Source: Fonticula alba ATCC 38817
Lineage: Eukaryota; Protista; Nucleariida
Reading direction: 5' to 3' (one strand)
Length of the DNA: 18,183 bases
Assembly: GCA_000388065.2 (NCBI GenBank)
Contig: KB932208.1
The position numbers were made by a program, and so were the translations under genes. The notes under the pieces are model-generated. The model did not search any database and was not told where the DNA came from. It worked only from the letters and a program-made list of their open reading frames with translations. How positions within the stretch are numbered: position 1 is the first letter of the stretch; each line of letters starts with the position of its first letter. Shown piece by piece: positions 10,101 to 16,056 of this stretch.

Positions 10101-11279
10101 CGCCACCGCCACACCCTGCCGGTGCAGGCGCGCGCCTGATGCGCACTTGCCCTTCCCCCACCACTGATCCCCTCTGCCCCCGCCTATGCATCCCCCTTCT
10201 TTTCTTTTCTTTTCCTTTTTTTCTCCCGGCCATGCCCGACATGATGGACACGCGTGCCATGGCTCGAAAATGCGCCGGCTCCCACGCGCACGCGTGCACT
10301 TGACAGCGTCTTCAACCAGATGCTCGAGCAAGGTGTCATCCGCATTTCCGAGGATGTCACCCGCCACATCACCCTTCACATCCTGACCGAGCGCCGCGCC
10401 GAGCGGCAGCTCCTGCTCCGGGGGGCGGATGCGGCGACGCTCGTCCGTCAACCGGACCTTTATCGGTCGATCACGGCCGTGGCAGATCGCGCCGGGCGGG
10501 AAATCAGCAACCTGTCGCTGCTGCTCATTCGTCGGATCCCCTCGCCGGGGCTGGTGCTGCACATTCTCCGGCAGCTGGCCAACGCCGGAGGTGGCGGTCC
10601 CACGGCCGGCTCCGGGCCGGGCTCCGATCTTGCGTATCCCCCGGGGGCCGGCATGAGTGATGTTGCCAGCCTCATTTGTGAGATTTCCGTCTCCTCGATC
10701 CTCACCCAGCTGCAGTTCATCTCCCTGCTCTATCGGCACCGGTACCAGAACCAGATCCACCACCAGGCCCAGGCCCAGGCCCACACGCAGGGCGGCCTGC
10801 TACGCACGAGCAGTGGCACCGCCCCGGGTGTCGGCGTCGGCGGCCAGGATGCCCCCTTGGGCATTCCCCGGCCGCTGTATGGCAGCGGGGCGGCCGTTGC
10901 CGCTGCGCCGGCCGCTCTGCATCAGCTCCCGCCGGAGGTGCTGAACGAGCTCCTCCTGGCTGATGATGGCCTGTCTTCGGCCGAGGCGGCCTTGGGGCAG
11001 GACTTCCAGCCGCTGGACACCAGCGACATCGAGGAGGATGACTATGCCCTGGTGGCCGGGACGCAGGCTCCCTCGCACAGCTTCGCCCCGATGGCCTACT
11101 TTTTGGTGTATCTCTTCCGTCAGGCATCGCGCCTGGCCCAGGCTCAGGCCGTGGATCCGAGTCTGCAGCCGCGCCCGTCGCTGGCCATGGCAGGGTCCCG
11201 TGGCGGCGGCACCCCAAGTGACCCGGTGGCCGATGTCCACTTCTTGGCGGCCGTCTATCGCTACGCCTTCAAGCATTGA
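4619..11279 (+). CDS. GSAP: Gamma-secretase-activating protein (GSAP/PION/pigeon) homolog, about 12 exons, interrupted by an assembly gap
   Basis: Phase-consistent exon chain: 4619-4936, 5121(or 5130)-5253, 5401-5573, 5704-5904, 6040-6277, 6416-6697, 6815-7015, 7189->7270 (gap), ~7871-8762, 8877-9262, 9390-10014, 10307-11279. Colinear matches to human GSAP (recalled): MLRLEHVFRLGHEL~MALRLVADFDLGKDV; LRLVGQERGDILLYT~LHVLNVERNGNIIYT; AIWSQWDISRQLLYYI~FVWAQWDMSEQRLYYI; NLLIIYLPG~YYVAVYLPG; SIYDCKTGTAYR~LVLDCCSGKLYR; APPEGFEDCFSLLGFYVLPRLVFNQMLEQGVIRISE~PLPPGFHTLHTILGVQCLPLHNLLHCIDSGVLLLTE. Confidence 0.85.
5121..5253 (+). CDS. GSAP: GSAP homolog exon 2 (acceptor at 5120 or 5129)
   Basis: KTFGTILFSYNIKQSRSTLMYLSWTPINIVNATQSHDESIF aligns to the GSAP stretch VVFGLYDCQTRQNELLY...; GTGCGT donor at 5254, phase 1. 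Confidence 0.7.
5401..5573 (+). CDS. GSAP: GSAP homolog exon 3
   Basis: CAG acceptor at 5398-5400, upstream GCTGAC branch-like motif, phase matches; GFVTFQQGPH...YSSDTYQRLVMIDHRRNEDDK; GT donor at 5574. Confidence 0.7.
5704..5904 (+). CDS. GSAP: GSAP homolog exon 4
   Basis: CAG acceptor at 5701-5703; contains the conserved IWSQWDISRQLLYYI; GTGCGC donor at 5905. Confidence 0.8.
6040..6277 (+). CDS. GSAP: GSAP homolog exon 5
   Basis: AAG acceptor after a poly-C tract; TMNALVLYILEFLSD...; GTACGT donor at 6278, phase 1. Confidence 0.7.
6416..6697 (+). CDS. GSAP: GSAP homolog exon 6
   Basis: CTAAC branch motif and CAG acceptor at 6413-6415; NGALALCHHGAPCEVTRQLRVSVF~TGSLCVCYSPKCASWGQITYSVF; GTACGC donor at 6698. 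Confidence 0.75.
6752..6808 (+). repeat. Intronic compound (CT)n(CA)n(CAAA)n microsatellite
   Basis: Lies inside GSAP intron 6698-6814. Confidence 0.85.
6815..7015 (+). CDS. GSAP: GSAP homolog exon 7
   Basis: TAG acceptor at 6812-6814; NLLIIYLPGIYIGMVDC; GTGCGT donor at 7016. Confidence 0.8.
7076..7120 (+). repeat. Intronic (CA)n microsatellite
   Basis: Lies inside GSAP intron 7016-7188. Confidence 0.95.
7189..7270 (+). CDS. GSAP: GSAP homolog exon 8 (truncated by the gap)
   Basis: CAG acceptor at 7186-7188, phase 1; SIYDCKTGTAYRFSLDPTTIRSLFVL; runs into N at 7271. Confidence 0.75.
7271..7684. other. Assembly gap inside the GSAP gene
   Basis: N run. Confidence 1.
7871..8762 (+). CDS. GSAP: GSAP homolog long exon (5' boundary uncertain; an extra exon may end at 7801)
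   Basis: TAG acceptor at 7868-7870 after poly-C; GAYFSFQLELL~SSYWSVYSE, followed by a Ser/Ala/Pro-rich insert; GTGCGT donor at 8763 is phase 2 and matches the next acceptor. Confidence 0.65.
8877..9262 (+). CDS. GSAP: GSAP homolog exon
   Basis: GCTAAC branch motif near 8834 and CAG acceptor at 8874-8876; SPEPFCFDRLFPPGKLL...PMRRFLQRILTSSD; GTGCGT donor at 9263. Confidence 0.65.
9390..10014 (+). CDS. GSAP: GSAP homolog exon
   Basis: Phase-1-compatible CAG acceptor at 9387-9389; YYDHIIAHHFGSCYPKLHRSIVDDWAHRYTRCLFTQL...PPEGFEDCFSLLGFYVLPR matches the GSAP C-terminal half; GTGCGT donor at 10015. Confidence 0.75.
10307..11279 (+). CDS. GSAP: GSAP homolog last exon
   Basis: CAG acceptor at 10304-10306, phase 2; VFNQMLEQGVIRISE...SFAPMAYFLVYL...VADVHFLAAVYRYAFKH then TGA at 11277-11279. 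The end resembles human EFLPLNYFIEIL...VDAEFVEEAALKH. Confidence 0.8.
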
Positions 11280-11677
11280 GAGGCCCCTGTCCGCGAGAGG
11301 CATGCCGCATAGGGATGCTGCCCTCTTGAAATACATCAGCGCCCCCCCCCCCCCTCCCGAGCAGCAGGCTGTGCGTCCGTATGCGTGTGTGTCCGAGGAG
11401 GAGAGGGGAAGCCGGAGGGGAGAAGGAAAGAGGGGAAGTCTATCTATTGGGGGAGGGTGACTTTGCCAGGACGCAAAAATAGGGCTCCATGGACTACAAC
11501 AAGGACAGGGAAGAAGAAAGGGGAGGGGAGAGGAAAGAGCAGGGGCGAAGCAGGGTGTGCTCGGGGGAATCTGAAGTATCGCCGCCATCACTCGCGAGGA
11601 AGAGGAGGAGGGAGGGGGCGGGGGCGGGGATCTGAGGGAATGGGTGGGGGGGGGGGGGGGGGGCAAAGGGCAGCACA

Positions 11678-13048
11678 TCAGTCCAATGGCGAAGGCCCGG
11701 ACTGGTGGATGGCTGATGGGTGGATGCCGAACAACCGTGCCAAATCCTGAGAAGAGCGGATATTCACCCGCACTGGGGATCGAGCGAGTGGGGCTGCAGG
11801 AAGGTCGGCCGGCGTGCCGGTCGGGGGGATGGTCGACTCATCGGCCGCCGGGGCCAGGCCACTGGGGGAAGATGGACCGCCGCCGGAAGGGGCAGGATCC
11901 AGGGCCGAAGACCGGGTGGACCGAAGAGCAGCATGCCCGCCGGCTGTGGCATTCTCACCGAGGGCTGACCCCTGGTTGGTGAGCTGGCGTGAGATCGCAG
12001 TGGGCGCAGGGCTCCCCGCTGTGGCCGTGGCCGTGGCCGTGGCCGTGGCCGTGGCCGTGGCTGCCGGCATGCCTGCCCTCGCTGTGGCATGGGGAATGGA
12101 TGACGGCAGCTTGGGGGGGATTGGTGCGGCGCTCCATGGCTGGTGTGCGCTGCCCCGGGGCTTGGGTGAGGCGCGCTTCTTTGGGCCGCTGGGTGCCGGG
12201 GTGGTGCCGACCCGCAATATCCGAGCCACGGTTCCGCAACTGACACCAACCGCCTGGGCAATCTGCCGATAGGAAATGCGCGGCCGGGTTTGCGCCCCGA
12301 GCTCGAGAATGCGACTACGCTGGGCGTCGGTCAGTGTCTTCCGGTCGCTGCGCCACTCGGGCAACTCCGCGCGGATGATGCGCGACACGCTGGTGTGGGG
12401 GACACCCAGCTGCCGGGAGATGGCGGCAATCGACAGCCGCGGCGAGGTCTGACTGGCCAGACGGACAATGGCCCCGCGGGTGCCGGCGGCGATTGGCTGC
12501 CCAGCTGGCCGGGCTTGGCGAATTGCCTCGGGCGGCAGGGCTTGCCGGAGGACACGCATCACGGTCGACTGGCTGACCCCCGTCTCGAAGGCCACCTGTC
12601 GAGTGGACAGGGCCGGCGAGCTGAGGAGCGCGTAGCGTAAAACCGTTCGCCGGATTTGGATGTTGATCGAACGGAAGGGGGTCGGCGCATGGACACGTCC
12701 CTCCATCAGGGGCGGATGCATGGGCGAATGCCGAGGCCCGGTCCCCGGCGATCCGGCCGGGGGACTGCAGACCCGAGGAGGGCCGGGTGCCGTGGGAGGG
12801 GGTGGCTCTACGAAGGCCGGACCGGCGCCAGTACCTGGCCGAGTGGGCGGCGTCCCGGCTGGCGCCGCGGCCCGGGCAGGTACCCCGCGACCGGAGGCCG
12901 GCGTGGAGAAAGTGGCTCGAGATACAGTGGCGACGGTGAAGCTGGCACATGGCAGCTCACAGCGAAAGGGGCCCAGGCCGGCCAAGGAAACTAGGCGCAG
13001 CATGCACCGGTCCAGGACAGAGGCCGACCCCAAGTCGCCATTGGAAGT
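11678..13048 (-). CDS. Multi-HTH putative DNA-binding protein (three tandem Tc1/IS630/paired-PAI-like HTH modules), main exon
   Basis: Open frame of more than 450 codons with three homologous ~42-aa units: SINIQIRRTVLRYALLSSPALSTRQVAFETGVSQSTVMRVLR, PIAAGTRGAIVRLASQTSPRLSIAAISRQLGVPHTSVSRIIR and TLTDAQRSRILELGAQTRPRISYRQIAQAVGVSCGTVARILR. A basic PKKRASPKPR follows. A minus-strand CAG acceptor lies at 13051-13049. Confidence 0.8.
   Translation of the reverse strand, partial: TSNGDLGSASVLDRCMLRLVSLAGLGPFRCELPCASFTVATVSRATFSTPASGRGVPARAAAPAGTPPTRPGTGAGPAFVEPPPPTAPGPPRVCSPPAGSPGTGPRHSPMHPPLMEGRVHAPTPFRSINIQIRRTVLRYALLSSPALSTRQVAFETGVSQSTVMRVLRQALPPEAIRQARPAGQPIAAGTRGAIVRLASQTSPRLSIAAISRQLGVPHTSVSRIIRAELPEWRSDRKTLTDAQRSRILELGAQTRPRISYRQIAQAVGVSCGTVARILRVGTTPAPSGPKKRASPKPRGSAHQPWSAAPIPPKLPSSIPHATARAGMPAATATATATATATATAGSPAPTAISRQLTNQGSALGENATAGGHAALRSTRSSALDPAPSGGGPSSPSGLAPAADESTIPPTGTPADLPAAPLARSPVRVNIRSSQDLARLFGIHPSAIHQSGPSPLD
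12021..12060 (-). repeat. Coding (GGCCAC)n hexamer repeat encoding poly(Ala-Thr)
   Basis: GTGGCC x6.7 on the + strand; translates as ATATATATATATATA in the multi-HTH ORF. Confidence 0.95.
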
Positions 13049-13067
13049 CTGCGCGGGGAGGCAGGAT

Positions 13068-13069
<2 letters not shown>

Positions 13070-13115
<46 letters not shown>

Positions 13116-13130
13116 CTTGTGTGTGTGTGT
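13070..13130 (-). repeat. (CA)n microsatellite on the - strand, in the putative HTH-gene intron
   Basis: (GT)n on the + strand. Confidence 0.95.
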
Positions 13131-13453
13131 GCTTTCTTTTTGCTTGCCGTGTATATGTGCAGGGGGGGGGGGGGTTGTGAAGAGGAGTGCCGGGCAACCG
13201 GGTGTGCGCCATGCCTGGGGATCTGAAAAGAGGGTCACCCCCGGGCCCAGGCGGAACACCCCGCCTCCCCACCGATGGGTGCCAGAACAGGATACCCCCC
13301 CCCCCCCCCCTCTCGGGGGCAAGAGCGAGGACAGCGCGCTGGGGCGATGTAGAGGCCGCCCCGAGGTGATCTCGGGAGCAAACCTTTGTTCCGGCGCCGG
13401 GCTCCAGGCGTGGGCAGCCACGATCCGCCCCCGCGCCGCAGGTAGCCACGCAC

Positions 13454-13459
13454 ATCCAT
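13454..13459 (-). CDS. Putative first coding exon end (Met-Asp) of the multi-HTH gene
   Basis: Minus strand reads ATG GAT|GTGCGT, the dominant donor in this window. Phase 0 joins the acceptor at 13049 in frame, giving MDTSNGDLGSAS. The exon may extend further upstream. Confidence 0.4.
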
Positions 13460-14111
13460 GCGCGAAGCGTGGGGAGCAGCCGTCGTGCTGATGCCGGAGA
13501 AGATGCCCCAGTTAAGACCCGGCCGAGCGGCACAGGCAGAGAGCTCTCCGCTCGCCCTGGTGATCAACTCACAGCCCCAGCCACACACTTCCGCCCCGCA
13601 CAGGAGGAGGAGGAAAGAACGGCACACAGCACGCAGCTCCACACAGGGGGATGGCCGCCTCCTGGGGCGGAGCGCGGCTCGGTCCTCCAACCACATCATT
13701 GGAGTAGCCCAGGCGCGGTGGGCAGCCGCGAGCAGAGCAGAGCAGAAGGCCGTCTCCCTGGTGCCAGGCAGCAGGGACCCCTCTCTGTCGAGGAGGGGGG
13801 GAAGGCACAATGGCGGGAGGCAAATGGCGGTGTGCCTGACACACACACACACACACACACGGAGGAAGAGGAGGAAGGGAGCATAGGCCCTGCGTTTATT
13901 GTGGACCGTGTGCCTTGCGTGGGGGGGGGGGAAGGGGGCTGCACATGTGCGTGCACACGCTGCACACAGGGTGTGATTCAGGGGGGGAGGGAGAGGGGGA
14001 AGGAGAGACGGAGATGAGGGGCGGCGTGTGCGCACACGCGGCCAGCGAGCCAGGATCTAGAGGTCGGAGACCCACAGATACTCCCTCTACGGGAGGAGGA
14101 GGATGTACGTG

Positions 14112-14178
14112 TGTGCGCGCGCGCGTGCGCGTGCGTGCGTGCGTATGTGTGTGTGTGCGTGCGTGCGTATGTCAGTGT
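14112..14178 (+). repeat. Compound (CG)/(GTGC)/(GT) microsatellite
   Basis: Directly visible. Confidence 0.8.
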
Positions 14179-14718
14179 GTCCGAGCAGGCCGCGCAGAGG
14201 AATGTCCATGGACGACACACAACAGCGAACTGACAGGCGCGACGCGGAGGAGGGGCGGGGGGACACGCGCGGTGGAGCCCTGCTCTCCCGACCCCGGGGG
14301 GGATATTGGTACAAAGAGAGCGGAGGGGGGGGGGACACGTGTGCGCGACAGCTGCTGGGGACACAGACACACCGGCGGCACCATTGGACGGACACAGGAG
14401 CGGCGAGGGGCACGGTGTAAGGGGGGGGGGATACGGTGGGCACGAGGAGGAGACCCCGCACAGTCGCAGACATGGAGAAGGAGAGGCAGGACAGGGGAGA
14501 GGGGGGAGGCAGGCGCACCGCTAGACCCATATCACGACGGGAGGGGGTGCTGCGTGAGGGCGTGGAGCCGGGCCGGTGGTGGCGGCGGCGGCGGCCACGC
14601 CGCATGCAGTGTGAGGAATGCGAGGCGCGGCATGTGGGCCGGGGGGGCACGCGCACGCGAGGCCGGCAGCCGCCGAGCGGAGGGGGGGGGGTCGGGGCTT
14701 GCCAGCAAGTACGCGCGC

Positions 14719-14964
14719 TTAGTCGAGCTTGGTGGGGAAGACACCGTTCTCGACCTGGTCGGTCCAGCGGTCGACCCACTCAATCGGGCAGAGAGAGGTG
14801 AAGGTCTTCTTGAACTGGACGCAGACGGGGAAGTCCTCGCCGCGGGCGTTGGCGCAGCGGTGGAAGTCCACGAAGTTCTGCCAGCAGTTCTTGGTCTGGT
14901 TGACGTTCGGGAAGCGGGCGTCGAACTGGGGGGTCTGGAGGACGGTCTCGGGGCGATCGGACAT
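14719..14964 (-). CDS. COX6B: Cytochrome c oxidase subunit 6B (COX12 in fungi), 81 aa
   Basis: MSDRPETVLQTPQFDARFPNVNQTKNCWQNFVDFHRCANARGEDFPVCVQFKKTFTSLCPIEWVDRWTDQVENGVFPTKLD contains the family signature FDARFPNxNQTKxCWQNxVDFHRC, the Cx9C/Cx10C cysteines and LCPxEWVxxW. ATG context is GCCACCATG. Confidence 0.97.
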   Translation of the reverse strand: MSDRPETVLQTPQFDARFPNVNQTKNCWQNFVDFHRCANARGEDFPVCVQFKKTFTSLCPIEWVDRWTDQVENGVFPTKLD

Positions 14965-14976
14965 GGTGGCGAAAGG

Positions 14977-15339
14977 CTGATGCAGAGGGAGGAGGTCAGC
15001 GGGGCAAGGGACCGCGGTTGGGGAGGGGGAAGGGGGAGAGCGAGCGCGAGGGGGAAGGAGGGAGGNNNNNNNNNNNNNNNNNNNNNNNNNNNNNNNNNNN
15101 NNNNNNNNNNNNNNNNNNNNNNNNNNNNNNNNNNNNNNNNNNNNNNNNNNNNNNNNNNNNNNNNNNNNNNNNNNNNNNNNNNNNNNNNNNNNNGGGGGGC
15201 ATGGGGGGGGGGGGGCGCGCTTCCGCGCGCAGCAGACATGCTCCGGATGTCGGTGGCCTGCGTGGCGGGGCTGCGCGCGCGCGGCCGCCATGGAGCCCGG
15301 GAGGCGGGGGAGAGGGGGGAGGGGGCGAGAAGGACATAC
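14977..15339 (-). other. Probable 5'-UTR intron of COX6B
   Basis: Minus strand shows a GCTGAC branch motif, a pyrimidine tract and CAG ending 12 nt before the ATG. A candidate GTATGT donor lies at 15339; the donor is less certain than the acceptor. Confidence 0.45.
15066..15193. other. Assembly gap
   Basis: N run. Confidence 1.
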
Positions 15340-15992
15340 AGGAAAGTGCAGGAGAGGAAAAGGGAAACCAAGGGAGCACAGTTCTGGTCCCTCGGGTGGG
15401 CCTCGCCGGAGTGGACGCCACCACAAAAAAAGGCCCGAAAGGCCGAAGTCGCCGCCGGGGGGGGGGGGGGCAGACCGAACACCGGCGGGCCCCGGGCCGC
15501 GGCGCCGCGTCAGGGGGGGACGGCCGGGGGGGGCGAAGGCGGGGGTGGCCGAGGGCCGGCGGTGTCGCAGAGACGGGCGTGTCGTATCCAGGCGCGCCGC
15601 GCTGACCCGGGCAAGCCCGCCCGAATCTGGACCTGGAGCATTGCGCGTGCGCCCTCCCCCGCGCCCGTGGAAGAGAAACGAAAACACGGCAGCCCGCCAA
15701 AATAACGCCGCCCCATCACCTCCTCTTCCCTGTCACTCGCAGGCGGGCGGGGGGGGCCTGCGCATCCCCTTGCCGGGCTTGGGCCAACCGGGGTGTCGTC
15801 CGTTGGTTGCACGGAATCGATGCCCTTCCGGAGGGATGCCTCCAGGCCGCTTCTGGCCGCAGGGCGCACCGAGCACAACGTGCTTTTGCATGCCCAAGGC
15901 CCCCCCCCCCCCCCCCCCCCTCCCGGTCCTGTCCCGTGGGCAGGAAGGAGGACCCCATCTGCCAGGCCCTGGCAGAAGGGCAGCAGCACCCT

Positions 15993-15995
<3 letters not shown>

Positions 15996-16056
<61 letters not shown>
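15996..16056 (+). repeat. Poly-G run of about 61 nt (probably artefactual)
   Basis: Directly abuts the duplicated segment that starts at 16056. Confidence 0.9.

What the first reader, a model, noticed from the sequence alone, without database searches (positions are those of the whole stretch)
12212..12670. Triple tandem paired(PAI)/Tc1-like HTH array in a catalytically empty protein: candidate domesticated transposase-derived, Pax-analogous transcription factor
Seen: three homologous modules at 12670-12545, 12502-12371 and 12337-12212, with consensus [IL]xxxxRxx[IV][LV]xxx...[LI]SxxxI[AS]xxxGVxxx[TS]VxR[IV][LI]R. They are followed by an NLS-like PKKRASPKPR and a low-complexity Ala/Thr/Pro/Ser tail. 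There is no DDE/D catalytic domain and no terminal inverted repeats were seen. Module 2 (GQPIAAGTRGAIVRLA...ISRQLGVPHTSVSRII) closely resembles the Pax3/7 PAI subdomain (GRPLPNHIRHKIVEMA...ISRQLRVSHGCVSKIL, recalled). Module 3 resembles IS30/IS630-type LTxxxRxxI...IAxxxGxSxxTVxR HTHs. Established: Pax paired domains derive from Tc1/mariner transposase DNA-binding domains and true Pax genes are essentially animal-specific. Inference: an independent domestication with module triplication in a non-animal lineage, reading a long or tripartite DNA site. The paired-domain N-terminal beta-hairpin and RED subdomain are not evident, so this is not a true Pax.
Basis: partly seen in the sequence, partly recalled or inferred. 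Interest (0 to 1): 0.78.

Follow-up and report, generated by a model that had tools for sequence, protein, structure and literature searches.

The report
Short Fonticula tandem-HTH array protein
A single-copy gene of the amoeba Fonticula alba, apparently missing from public protein sets, encodes a very basic protein with three DNA-gripping helix-turn-helix modules in a row; it is a short member of a multi-gene family of such arrays in this genome, not a demonstrable Pax-like tamed transposase.

Summary
Window 12212-12670 (minus strand) encodes three homologous tri-helical HTH modules, 55-56 aa apart. There is no nuclease domain and there are no terminal inverted repeats. The DNA is single copy.

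The Pax/Tc1 reading is only weakly supported:
- The PAX model scores 15.5 bits, under its cut-off of 22.
- Sequence searches of solved structures find no Pax chain.
- Structural matches to Pax5/6 (Z about 6) tie with Tc3, Myb, IS21 and ordinary bacterial regulators.
- No Tc1/IS630 transposase domain is found in the genome.

The genome is Fonticula alba. The gene is a three-module paralogue of a family of tandem-HTH array proteins present at 14 or more loci. A profile built only from other members scores it 79 bits, and it keeps the family's LPEW tail motif.

This scan has already reported the family on other DNA of this genome. New here:
- This member is absent from the public protein sets searched.
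- The family is not wholly without outside look-alikes. Similar arrays occur in a Mycobacterium protein and in metagenomic HNH endonucleases that share the tail motif.

The most likely function is binding an extended nucleic-acid site. Cellular location and expression are untested.

The parts
11678..13003 (-). Proposed intron-free coding sequence, 441 aa plus stop. The first ATG is at 13003 and the stop at 11678-11680. The stop-to-stop frame reaches 13234.
   Evidence: GC3 signature in the HTH block; no further modules in any frame of 9500-15500
12722..13003 (-). N-terminal leader, 94 aa, starting MLRLVSLAG. It is rich in Arg/Ala/Pro/Gly, has 8 K+R against 2 D+E, and a pI of 11.5. It resembles the ML..R-rich N-termini of annotated family members. 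It may be a mitochondrial presequence, or the true start may lie at Met 12721 or 12706.
   Evidence: no Pfam hit; GC2>GC3 here, so coding status is less sure
12503..12670 (-). HTH module 1, the most diverged. Helices lie at 12623-12679, 12581-12604 and 12539-12571. The tail motif ALPPE is at 12527-12541.
   Evidence: Pfam HTH_7 19.2 bits; family leave-out HMM 13.9 bits; AF2 helices
12338..12502 (-). HTH module 2. Helices lie at 12452-12487, 12407-12430 and 12365-12397. The family tail motif ELPEW is at 12353-12367.
   Evidence: HTH_23 25.2 bits, PAX 15.5 bits; leave-out HMM 35.6 bits; best match to paralogue module C7a_B, z 13.7
12185..12337 (-). HTH module 3, with an LTDAQR start. Helices lie at 12296-12328, 12248-12271 and 12206-12238. 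It has no PEY-type tail.
   Evidence: HTH_38 26.3, HTH_23 25.5, HTH_32 24.4 bits; leave-out HMM 36.5 bits
12155..12184 (-).
   Evidence: function not tested
11774..12154 (-). Low-complexity Ala/Thr/Pro/Ser/Gly tail, including (Ala-Thr)n coded by the hexamer repeat at 12021-12061
   Evidence: no Pfam hit
11702..11773 (-). C-terminal HTH-like remnant of 24 aa. It is not significant on its own.
   Evidence: HTH_Tnp_4 13.9 bits, E 0.041 alone; family HMM -2.8 bits; BLASTP to a paralogue module E 0.59
13071..13131 (.). (GT)30/(CA)30 microsatellite just upstream of the start codon. It is one arm of the only 'inverted repeats' found.

Best explanation
This is a short, three-module paralogue of the Fonticula alba tandem-HTH array family.

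Shown: three tri-helical helix-turn-helix modules, 55-56 aa apart, sit in a strongly basic block (pI 12). Each module has the family signature: a helix-1 start like L-T/S-x-x-Q, a P-x-L-S/T step, an I-A/S-x-x-x-G-V-S turn, and a T/S-V-x-R recognition helix. Module 2 also keeps the L-P-E-W tail.

Inferred: the protein binds nucleic acid, most likely double-stranded DNA. Each recognition helix would sit in a major groove. The flexible 12-15-residue linkers would let the three modules read one extended or composite site, as the bipartite domains of Pax and Tc3 and the R1R2R3 repeats of Myb do. It has no enzymatic part.

Where it acts is open. My estimates:
- Mitochondrion about 45%, because the N-terminus resembles the Arg-rich, acid-poor leaders of annotated family members.
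- Nucleus about 35%.
- Not expressed or not functional about 20%.

Origin: duplication within the family. The module type is the generic HTH_23/HTH_38 class. That class is also used by IS630/IS30/Tc1 transposases, by Pax, by phage regulators and by the DNA-binding arrays of HNH homing endonucleases, so the donor lineage cannot be named.
For: Genome identity: annotated Fonticula alba protein H696_04164 (P0037) is encoded at 100% identity over its full length in G000.

Family membership:
- Own-genome tblastn finds paralogues.
- An HMM built from 14 modules of four other genes, with no window sequence, scores the ORF 79.3 bits (modules 13.9, 35.6, 36.5). That is above any Pfam HTH model, which reach 26.3 bits at most.
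- The A1 module profile finds 37 matches at 14 or more loci, with up to about 10 modules per gene.
- BLASTP against the C7 paralogue gives 32% identity over 145 aa, collinear over three modules, E 1e-12.
- The period and the LPEW/PEY tail are shared.

Fold: AF2 gives 3 x three helices and no wing.

Charge: 27 K+R against 8 D+E in the HTH block.

Not a transposon: single copy, no TIRs, no DDE.

Coding signal: high GC3 in the HTH block, and no decayed modules in other frames.

Leader: N-termini of H696_04164, H696_02184 and H696_06061 start ML(S/Q) and are Arg-rich, like this one.
Against: - The protein is in neither public protein collection searched, although it was a row of the query profile. 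It therefore seems unannotated, and expression is unknown.
- In a genome of roughly 65-70% G+C (window profile), long open frames arise by chance.
- The leader and tail lack a clear codon-position signal.
- It has only three modules, where other members have five to ten.
- No orthologue is available for a selection test.
- DNA binding, the target and the location are inferences.
- AF2 gives no confident packing between modules (pTM 0.37), so cooperative reading of one site is not shown.
- No targeting predictor was available.
Confidence: 0.7

Rival explanations
1. One reading: a domesticated Tc1/mariner or IS630 transposase DNA-binding domain, triplicated independently, now acting as a Pax-like nuclear transcription factor.
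For: - HTH_23 is just over its cut-off for modules 2 and 3. HTH_38, HTH_32, HTH_SB and HTH_Tnp_Tc3_2 give sub-threshold hits, and PAX gives 15.5 bits for module 2.
- Modules 2+3 align to Pax5 (Z 6.0, 32% identity over 89 residues), Pax6 (Z 5.8) and Tc3 (Z 6.2).
- Foldseek probability is 0.93-0.95 for Pax5/6.
- The SETMAR HTH scores E 0.022 with the tri-module profile.
- The three modules are slightly more alike to each other than modules 1 and 3 are to their collinear partners in the paralogue.
- A basic KKR patch follows the array.
Against: - PAX is below its cut-off, and no Pax or Tc3 appears in PDB sequence searches at E<=10.
- All structural matches are tied at Z<=6.8 with unrelated HTH regulators.
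- No DDE_3, mariner or pogo domain was found in the genome (the last two had no positive control).
- The gene belongs to a family whose members mostly hit HTH_24, IclR and MarR-type models.
- Equally good outside matches are a Mycobacterium array and phage-type proteins.
Confidence: 0.12
2. A non-functional relic: a partial duplicate of a longer family member. It stays open only because stop codons are rare in this GC-rich genome.
For: - It is absent from public protein sets.
- It is the shortest array in the family.
- Half of the ORF is low-complexity sequence coded partly by microsatellites.
- The leader and tail lack a coding GC3 signal.
- Overlapping long ORFs occur in every frame.
- Other loci of the family show fresh disruptive duplications.
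Against: - All three modules keep the hydrophobic core, the turn glycine and the T/S-V-x-R helix. Modules 2 and 3 score like good members against a leave-out profile.
- GC3 reaches 0.93 in the HTH block.
- There are no frameshifted module remnants around it.
- An ATG with a family-like leader is in place.
Confidence: 0.18
3. An origin hypothesis that can coexist with the best explanation: the family descends from a prokaryotic or phage tandem-HTH array, such as the DNA-binding arm of an HNH homing endonuclease. On this view it was acquired by this bacterivorous amoeba and then expanded.
For: - The tri-module profile finds 1283 proteins at E<=1e-3, many with 2-11 matched stretches.
- The Mycobacterium sp. 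protein WP_421845497.1 aligns at 32% identity over three collinear modules, E 5e-12. That is as good as the best paralogue.
- Metagenomic P0029 and P0062 carry HNH_3 plus 7-8 modules, each ending in a hydrophobic-P-E/D-Y/F/H tail like the Fonticula LPEY.
- P0091 repeats end in APEW.
- PHROG hits include HNH endonuclease HTH regions.
Against: - Summed scores over repeats of a generic HTH inflate significance.
- The reciprocal HMM gives only 12-29 bits per module.
- Those arrays fall into different Pfam HTH types (HTH_11/24 against HTH_23/32), so they are not one family.
Confidence: 0.25

Closest known systems
Fonticula alba tandem-HTH array family (annotated only as hypothetical proteins: H696_04164, H696_02184, H696_06061, H696_05870, H696_05449; plus loci on contigs C1, C3, C4, C7 and others)
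   Same: Module sequence signature, 52-56 aa period, LP(E/D)(Y/F/W) tail after helix 3, high pI, ML..Arg-rich N-terminus, no introns, no enzymatic domain.
   Different: It has only three modules, against five to ten. A long low-complexity tail follows them. Module 3 has lost the tail motif. It is not present in public protein sets.
Pax paired domain (PF00292; PAI + RED sub-domains)
   Same: Two or more tri-helical HTH units about 55-60 aa apart on one chain, read as one extended site. Modules 2+3 superpose on Pax5/Pax6 at Z 5.8-6.0 with 26-32% identity.
   Different: It scores below the PAX cut-off (15.5 against 22 bits). There is no N-terminal beta-hairpin. No sequence hit to Pax chains was found. 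It has three equivalent modules rather than PAI and RED. The host is not an animal.
Bipartite DNA-binding domains of Tc3 / Sleeping Beauty / IS630 (HTH_23, HTH_Tnp_Tc3_2) and of IS21 IstA
   Same: Same simple HTH class. HTH_23 is over its cut-off for two modules. Tc3 1u78 matches at Z 6.2 and IstA at Z 5.9 over modules 2+3.
   Different: No DDE domain, no TIRs, single copy. No DDE_3 anywhere in the genome.
Pipsqueak (four tandem Psq HTH motifs) and Myb R1R2R3 repeats (from my own knowledge: Lehmann 1998; Siegmund and Lehmann 2002; Ogata 1994)
   Same: Tandem arrays of roughly 50-aa tri-helical HTH units forming one DNA-binding domain. Cdc5 Myb repeats match modules 2+3 at Z 6.3.
   Different: No HTH_psq or Myb Pfam hit for this protein. 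The regularly spaced Trp residues of Myb are absent.
Prokaryotic and phage tandem-HTH arrays: Mycobacterium sp. WP_421845497.1; metagenomic HNH_3 endonucleases with 7-8 HTH modules (P0029, P0062)
   Same: Same module class (HTH_23/HTH_32), a similar 48-53 aa period, 32% identity over three collinear modules, and a shared hydrophobic-P-E/D-aromatic tail in the HNH-linked arrays.
   Different: Those carry a nuclease or near-identical young repeats. The Fonticula modules are old and diverged, sit in a eukaryotic nuclear genome, and have leaders. Homology as opposed to convergence is not settled.
Organellar helical-repeat families (PPR, mTERF, OPR, FASTK 'HTH repeats'; PMC12687428)
   Same: Lineage-expanded repeat proteins behind organelle-type leaders. 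This is a possible functional analogy if the family is mitochondrial.
   Different: Those repeats are helical hairpins that stack into solenoids and bind RNA. Here each unit is a classic DNA-binding HTH, and AF2 shows no stacking.

Membership tests
Pax paired domain (PF00292) | Score at or above the curated PAX cut-off (22 bits) | tested here: not met
   15.5 bits, E 0.017, module 2 only, profile positions 15-54. The best PAX match in the whole genome is 19.2 bits, at another locus.
Pax paired domain (PF00292) | N-terminal beta-hairpin before the PAI HTH | tested here: not met
   The AF2 model has helices only, with no strand.
Pax paired domain (PF00292) | Two distinct sub-domains (PAI, RED) detectable by sequence against solved Pax chains | tested here: not met
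   phmmer and hmmsearch against PDB give no Pax at E<=10. There is only a tied structural match, Z 5.8-6.0.
Tc1/mariner/IS630 transposase or a non-autonomous derivative | DDE/D catalytic domain in the ORF or in parent copies in the genome | tested here: not met
   No DDE family appears in the Pfam scan of the ORF. PF13358 has no match in G000. PF01359 and PF03184 have none either, but without a positive control.
Tc1/mariner/IS630 transposase or a non-autonomous derivative | Terminal inverted repeats and multiple copies | tested here: not met
   Only microsatellite arms were found. The 1.8-kb locus is unique in the genome.
Tc1/mariner/IS630 transposase or a non-autonomous derivative | HTH of the HTH_23 / HTH_Tnp_Tc3 type | tested here: inconclusive
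   HTH_23 scores 25.2 and 25.5 bits against a cut-off of 24.6. HTH_24, AsnC, IclR and HTH_38 score within 1-6 bits of that.
Fonticula alba tandem-HTH array family | Modules match a profile built from other members only | tested here: met
   79.3 bits in total; modules score 13.9, 35.6 and 36.5.
Fonticula alba tandem-HTH array family | Head-to-tail period of 52-56 aa, and collinear alignment with a paralogue's array | tested here: met
   Module starts are 56 and 55 aa apart. Identity is 32% over 145 aa with the last three modules of the C7 gene, E 1e-12.
Fonticula alba tandem-HTH array family | LP(E/D)(Y/F/W) motif after the recognition helix | tested here: met
   Module 2 has ELPEW. Module 1 has the weakened ALPPE. 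Module 3 has none.
Fonticula alba tandem-HTH array family | Arg-rich, acid-poor N-terminal leader (proposed mitochondrial presequence) | tested here: inconclusive
   The leader has 8 K+R against 2 D+E and a pI of 11.5. It starts ML like H696_04164, H696_02184 and H696_06061. No targeting predictor was available, and the composition is also what a GC-rich genome produces.
Fonticula alba tandem-HTH array family | Five or more modules | tested here: not met
   There are exactly three modules, and none in any other frame of 9500-15500. The C-terminal HTH-like stretch is not significant.
Pipsqueak / Myb tandem HTH repeats | Match to HTH_psq or Myb_DNA-binding models | tested here: not met
   Neither is among the Pfam matches shown at E<=1 (the best 25 of 46 and of 58 families) or at E<=0.1 for the single modules, where all rows are shown.

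The most novel reading that the evidence does not exclude
The Fonticula tandem-HTH proteins, this one included, might be a eukaryotic, nuclear-encoded and organelle-targeted set of modular nucleic-acid readers built from classic HTH units. That would be an HTH-based counterpart of PPR, mTERF or TALE arrays. They would be seeded from the DNA-binding arm of phage or bacterial homing endonucleases, with each module reading a few bases and each paralogue addressing a different mitochondrial or nuclear site.
Probability: 0.1. Interest if true: 0.8.

Novelty: new variant of a known kind. Interest (0 to 1): 0.4.

Why it matters
Multi-HTH DNA readers are known (Pax, Myb, Pipsqueak, Tc3). A lineage-specific expansion of long HTH arrays in a close relative of fungi is not described in the papers I could search.

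This locus adds three things:
- A minimal three-module member, small enough for binding and structural work.
- Evidence that the public gene set appears to miss some members.
- Evidence that look-alike arrays exist outside Fonticula. Some are fused to HNH nucleases and share the same tail motif. That gives a concrete, testable origin and a mechanistic precedent: arrays that read long target sites.

It also corrects an attractive but unsupported Pax/transposase story.

Tried and rejected
- Word-index protein search with residues 115-285: no hit, not even the protein itself.
- Exact look-ups of three start variants and two paralogue ORFs: not in the collection.
- A fourth C-terminal HTH: rejected. 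HTH_Tnp_4 scores only 13.9 bits on the isolated piece, and the family HMM scores -2.8.
- Extra decayed modules in other frames: none.
- A module tree to decide between internal triplication and an inherited array: unresolved with 56 columns. Pairwise scores point both ways.
- Foldseek against PDB: nothing at E<0.001. The VIA second look gave only ties at Z<=6.8. Structure therefore cannot assign an HTH sub-family.
- ESM Atlas: all scores below 0.9, generic phage and bacterial HTH_23/28/38 clusters.
- Neighbouring ORFs in the window: no Pfam domains.
I could therefore get neither the gene context of the outside arrays nor the public gene calls at this locus.
- Literature searches found no paper on Fonticula HTH arrays. 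The 'HTH repeats' of FASTK proteins are helical hairpins, not this motif.
Full report
**Observation**

The minus strand of the window carries an open frame from 13234 to the stop at 11678-11680. Its first ATG is at 13003, which gives 441 aa.

Each stretch is a helix-turn-helix by Pfam:
- Module 2 scores 25.2 bits on HTH_23.
- Module 3 scores 26.3 on HTH_38 and 25.5 on HTH_23.
- Module 1 scores 19.2 on HTH_7.
- The 153-aa block scores 48.8 bits on HTH_23 in three stretches.

Pairwise Smith-Waterman scores among the modules are 67-70 (z 9.2-10.0). None of 500 shuffles reached them. AlphaFold2 run on a five-row family alignment gives three units of long helix, 8-residue helix and 11-residue helix. 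There are no strands and no confident packing between units (pLDDT 72.9, pTM 0.37).

The ORF has no catalytic domain. The only inverted repeats nearby are (GT)n/(CA)n microsatellites. The 1.8-kb locus is unique in the 31.3-Mb assembly.

**What genome, what family**

A tblastn of the block against the window's own assembly found weak paralogues on contigs C7, C1 and C4. Notes from earlier sessions of this scan named the organism Fonticula alba and described a family of tandem-HTH array proteins at other loci.

I checked both points myself. The annotated protein H696_04164 of Fonticula alba is encoded at 100% identity over all 744 residues on contig C6 of this assembly.

The paralogous ORFs carry the same module again and again. 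The module runs as follows:
- a start like L-S/T-x-x-Q;
- a helix ending in L-A;
- a proline step;
- L-T/S-x-x-x-I-A-x-x-x-G-L/V-S;
- a recognition helix with V-x-R;
- a tail L-P-E/D-Y/F.

The period is 52-56 aa.

An HMM built from 14 modules of four other genes, without any window sequence, scores this ORF 79.3 bits (modules 13.9, 35.6, 36.5). That is well above any Pfam HTH model. Module 2 keeps the tail as LPEW and module 1 keeps it as LPPE.

A 17-module profile finds 37 matches at 14 or more loci of the genome. Some genes carry up to about ten modules. BLASTP aligns the three modules collinearly with the last three modules of the C7 gene (32% identity over 145 aa, E 1e-12).

I could not decide whether the three arose by internal duplication or were inherited as a block. 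They are about as similar to each other as module 2 is to its C7 partner, and a module tree is unresolved. A six-frame scan shows no further or decayed modules around the gene. The C-terminal HTH-like stretch is not significant.

**The Pax/Tc1 idea**

- PAX scores 15.5 bits for module 2 only, under the cut-off of 22.
- Sequence searches of all solved structures list no Pax or Tc3 chain at E<=10. I ran them with the 170-aa block, with modules 2+3, and with the tri-module profile. The best rows are TtgV, ParB, topoisomerase V HTH repeats and the SETMAR HTH (E 0.022).
- Foldseek has nothing below E 0.086. Pax5 and Pax6 do appear (E about 0.3, probability 0.93-0.95, 25-27% identity), next to AraC-type, SelB and DUX4 two-domain proteins.
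- The VIA second look gives Z 6.0 for Pax5 (32% identity over 89 residues) and Z 5.8 for Pax6. These tie with Tc3 (6.2), Cdc5 Myb repeats (6.3), IstA (5.9), TtgV (6.8), TrpR and DeoR.
- The genome has no DDE_3 match and no mariner or pogo DDE match, although those two searches lacked a positive control.
- Across 17 family modules the commonest Pfam hits are HTH_24 (7), then IclR, HTH_23, ISL3 and sigma-70 region 4 (4 each). PAX never appears.

The modules therefore belong to the broad simple tri-helical HTH class that Pax and transposases also use. A specific descent from a Tc1-type element is not shown.

**Outside the genome**

The tri-module profile was searched against 1.84 billion representative proteins. 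It found 1283 proteins at E<=1e-3 and 147 at E<=1e-10. Many have 2-11 matched stretches.

At least six of the best 150 are annotated Fonticula 'hypothetical proteins'. The window's own protein is absent, as are the C7 and long C1 genes, although all three were rows of the query. They therefore seem to be missing from public gene sets.

The remaining hits checked are tandem HTH arrays from other organisms:
- A Mycobacterium sp. protein, WP_421845497.1, has seven to eight near-identical HTH_32/HTH_23 repeats. It aligns to this protein at 32% identity over three collinear modules (E 5e-12). That is as good as the best paralogue.
- Metagenomic proteins P0029 and P0062 join an HNH_3 endonuclease domain (42.7 bits) to seven or eight modules. 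Each module ends in a hydrophobic-P-E/D-Y/F/H tail like the Fonticula LPEY.
- P0091 has repeats ending in APEW.
- PHROG families hit by this protein include HTH regions of phage HNH endonucleases, transposases and repressors.

These arrays are heterogeneous (HTH_11/24 against HTH_23/32 types). Summed repeat scores also overstate kinship. Even so, the earlier notes' statement that nothing similar exists outside the species needs softening.

**Mechanism**

Shown: three HTH folds in a block of pI 12.0, with 27 K+R against 8 D+E, joined by 12-15-residue linkers, and no enzyme domain.

Inferred: each recognition helix enters a major groove, and the array reads an extended or composite site. This is how the bipartite Pax and Tc3 domains, Myb R1R2R3 and, by fusion context, the HNH-linked arrays work.

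The N-terminus (ML..., 8 K+R against 2 D+E in 94 residues) resembles the leaders of annotated family members. That fits a mitochondrial presequence. However, such composition is also what a genome of about 65-70% G+C produces, and no predictor was available. The KKR patch after module 3 could equally serve nuclear import.

Coding evidence is good for the HTH block (GC3 up to 0.93) and poor for the leader and tail.

**Verdict**

This is an apparently unannotated, minimal member of an undescribed Fonticula family that the scan has already logged on other DNA. Expression, location and target remain open.

Public gene calls at the locus and the contexts of the outside arrays could therefore not be inspected.

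Noticed in passing
L012:5341-5689 and L012:4738-5123 (G000 contig C7, about 20.7-21.7 kb): The closest paralogue locus holds two perfect tandem duplications. One is 185 nt at a spacing of 201 and stays in frame. The other is 167 nt at a spacing of 182, which shifts the frame and splits what looks like one long array gene into two overlapping ORFs (5402..7477 and 3447..6098). It is either a very recent disruptive duplication or an assembly artefact.
   Followed up: partly
P0002, P0004, P0007-P0012, P0029, P0062, P0091 (hits): Tandem arrays of 4-11 HTH modules, with periods of about 46-73 aa, occur in a Mycobacterium sp. and in metagenome sequences. Some of the metagenome proteins are acidic and haloarchaeal-like by composition (not checked by taxon), and some are fused to an HNH_3 endonuclease or a helicase. 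I found no paper treating them as a class.
   Followed up: partly
P0067, P0080, P0127 (H696_06061, H696_05870, H696_05449), C-terminal ~60 aa: Three annotated Fonticula array proteins share a conserved non-HTH C-terminal stretch with a Y-x-R-H-P-C motif. This gene lacks it. Its nature was not examined.
   Followed up: no
window 4367-4491, 15996-16056, 4218-4246: Long homopolymer runs (C x125, G x61, G x29), with several runs of N elsewhere in the window. These are probably gap-edge or sequencing artefacts of the assembly.
   Followed up: no
window 10254-11279 (+): The 3' end of a neighbouring gene converges tail-to-tail on this one, with about 400 bp between the stops. It and all other long ORFs of the window have no Pfam domain.
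   Followed up: partly
window 13071-13131 and 12021-12061: A (CA)30 microsatellite lies 70-130 bp upstream of the start codon. A (GTGGCC)6.8 repeat inside the CDS codes an (Ala-Thr)n run, and a similar Ala-Thr run sits in the C7 paralogue.
   Followed up: no
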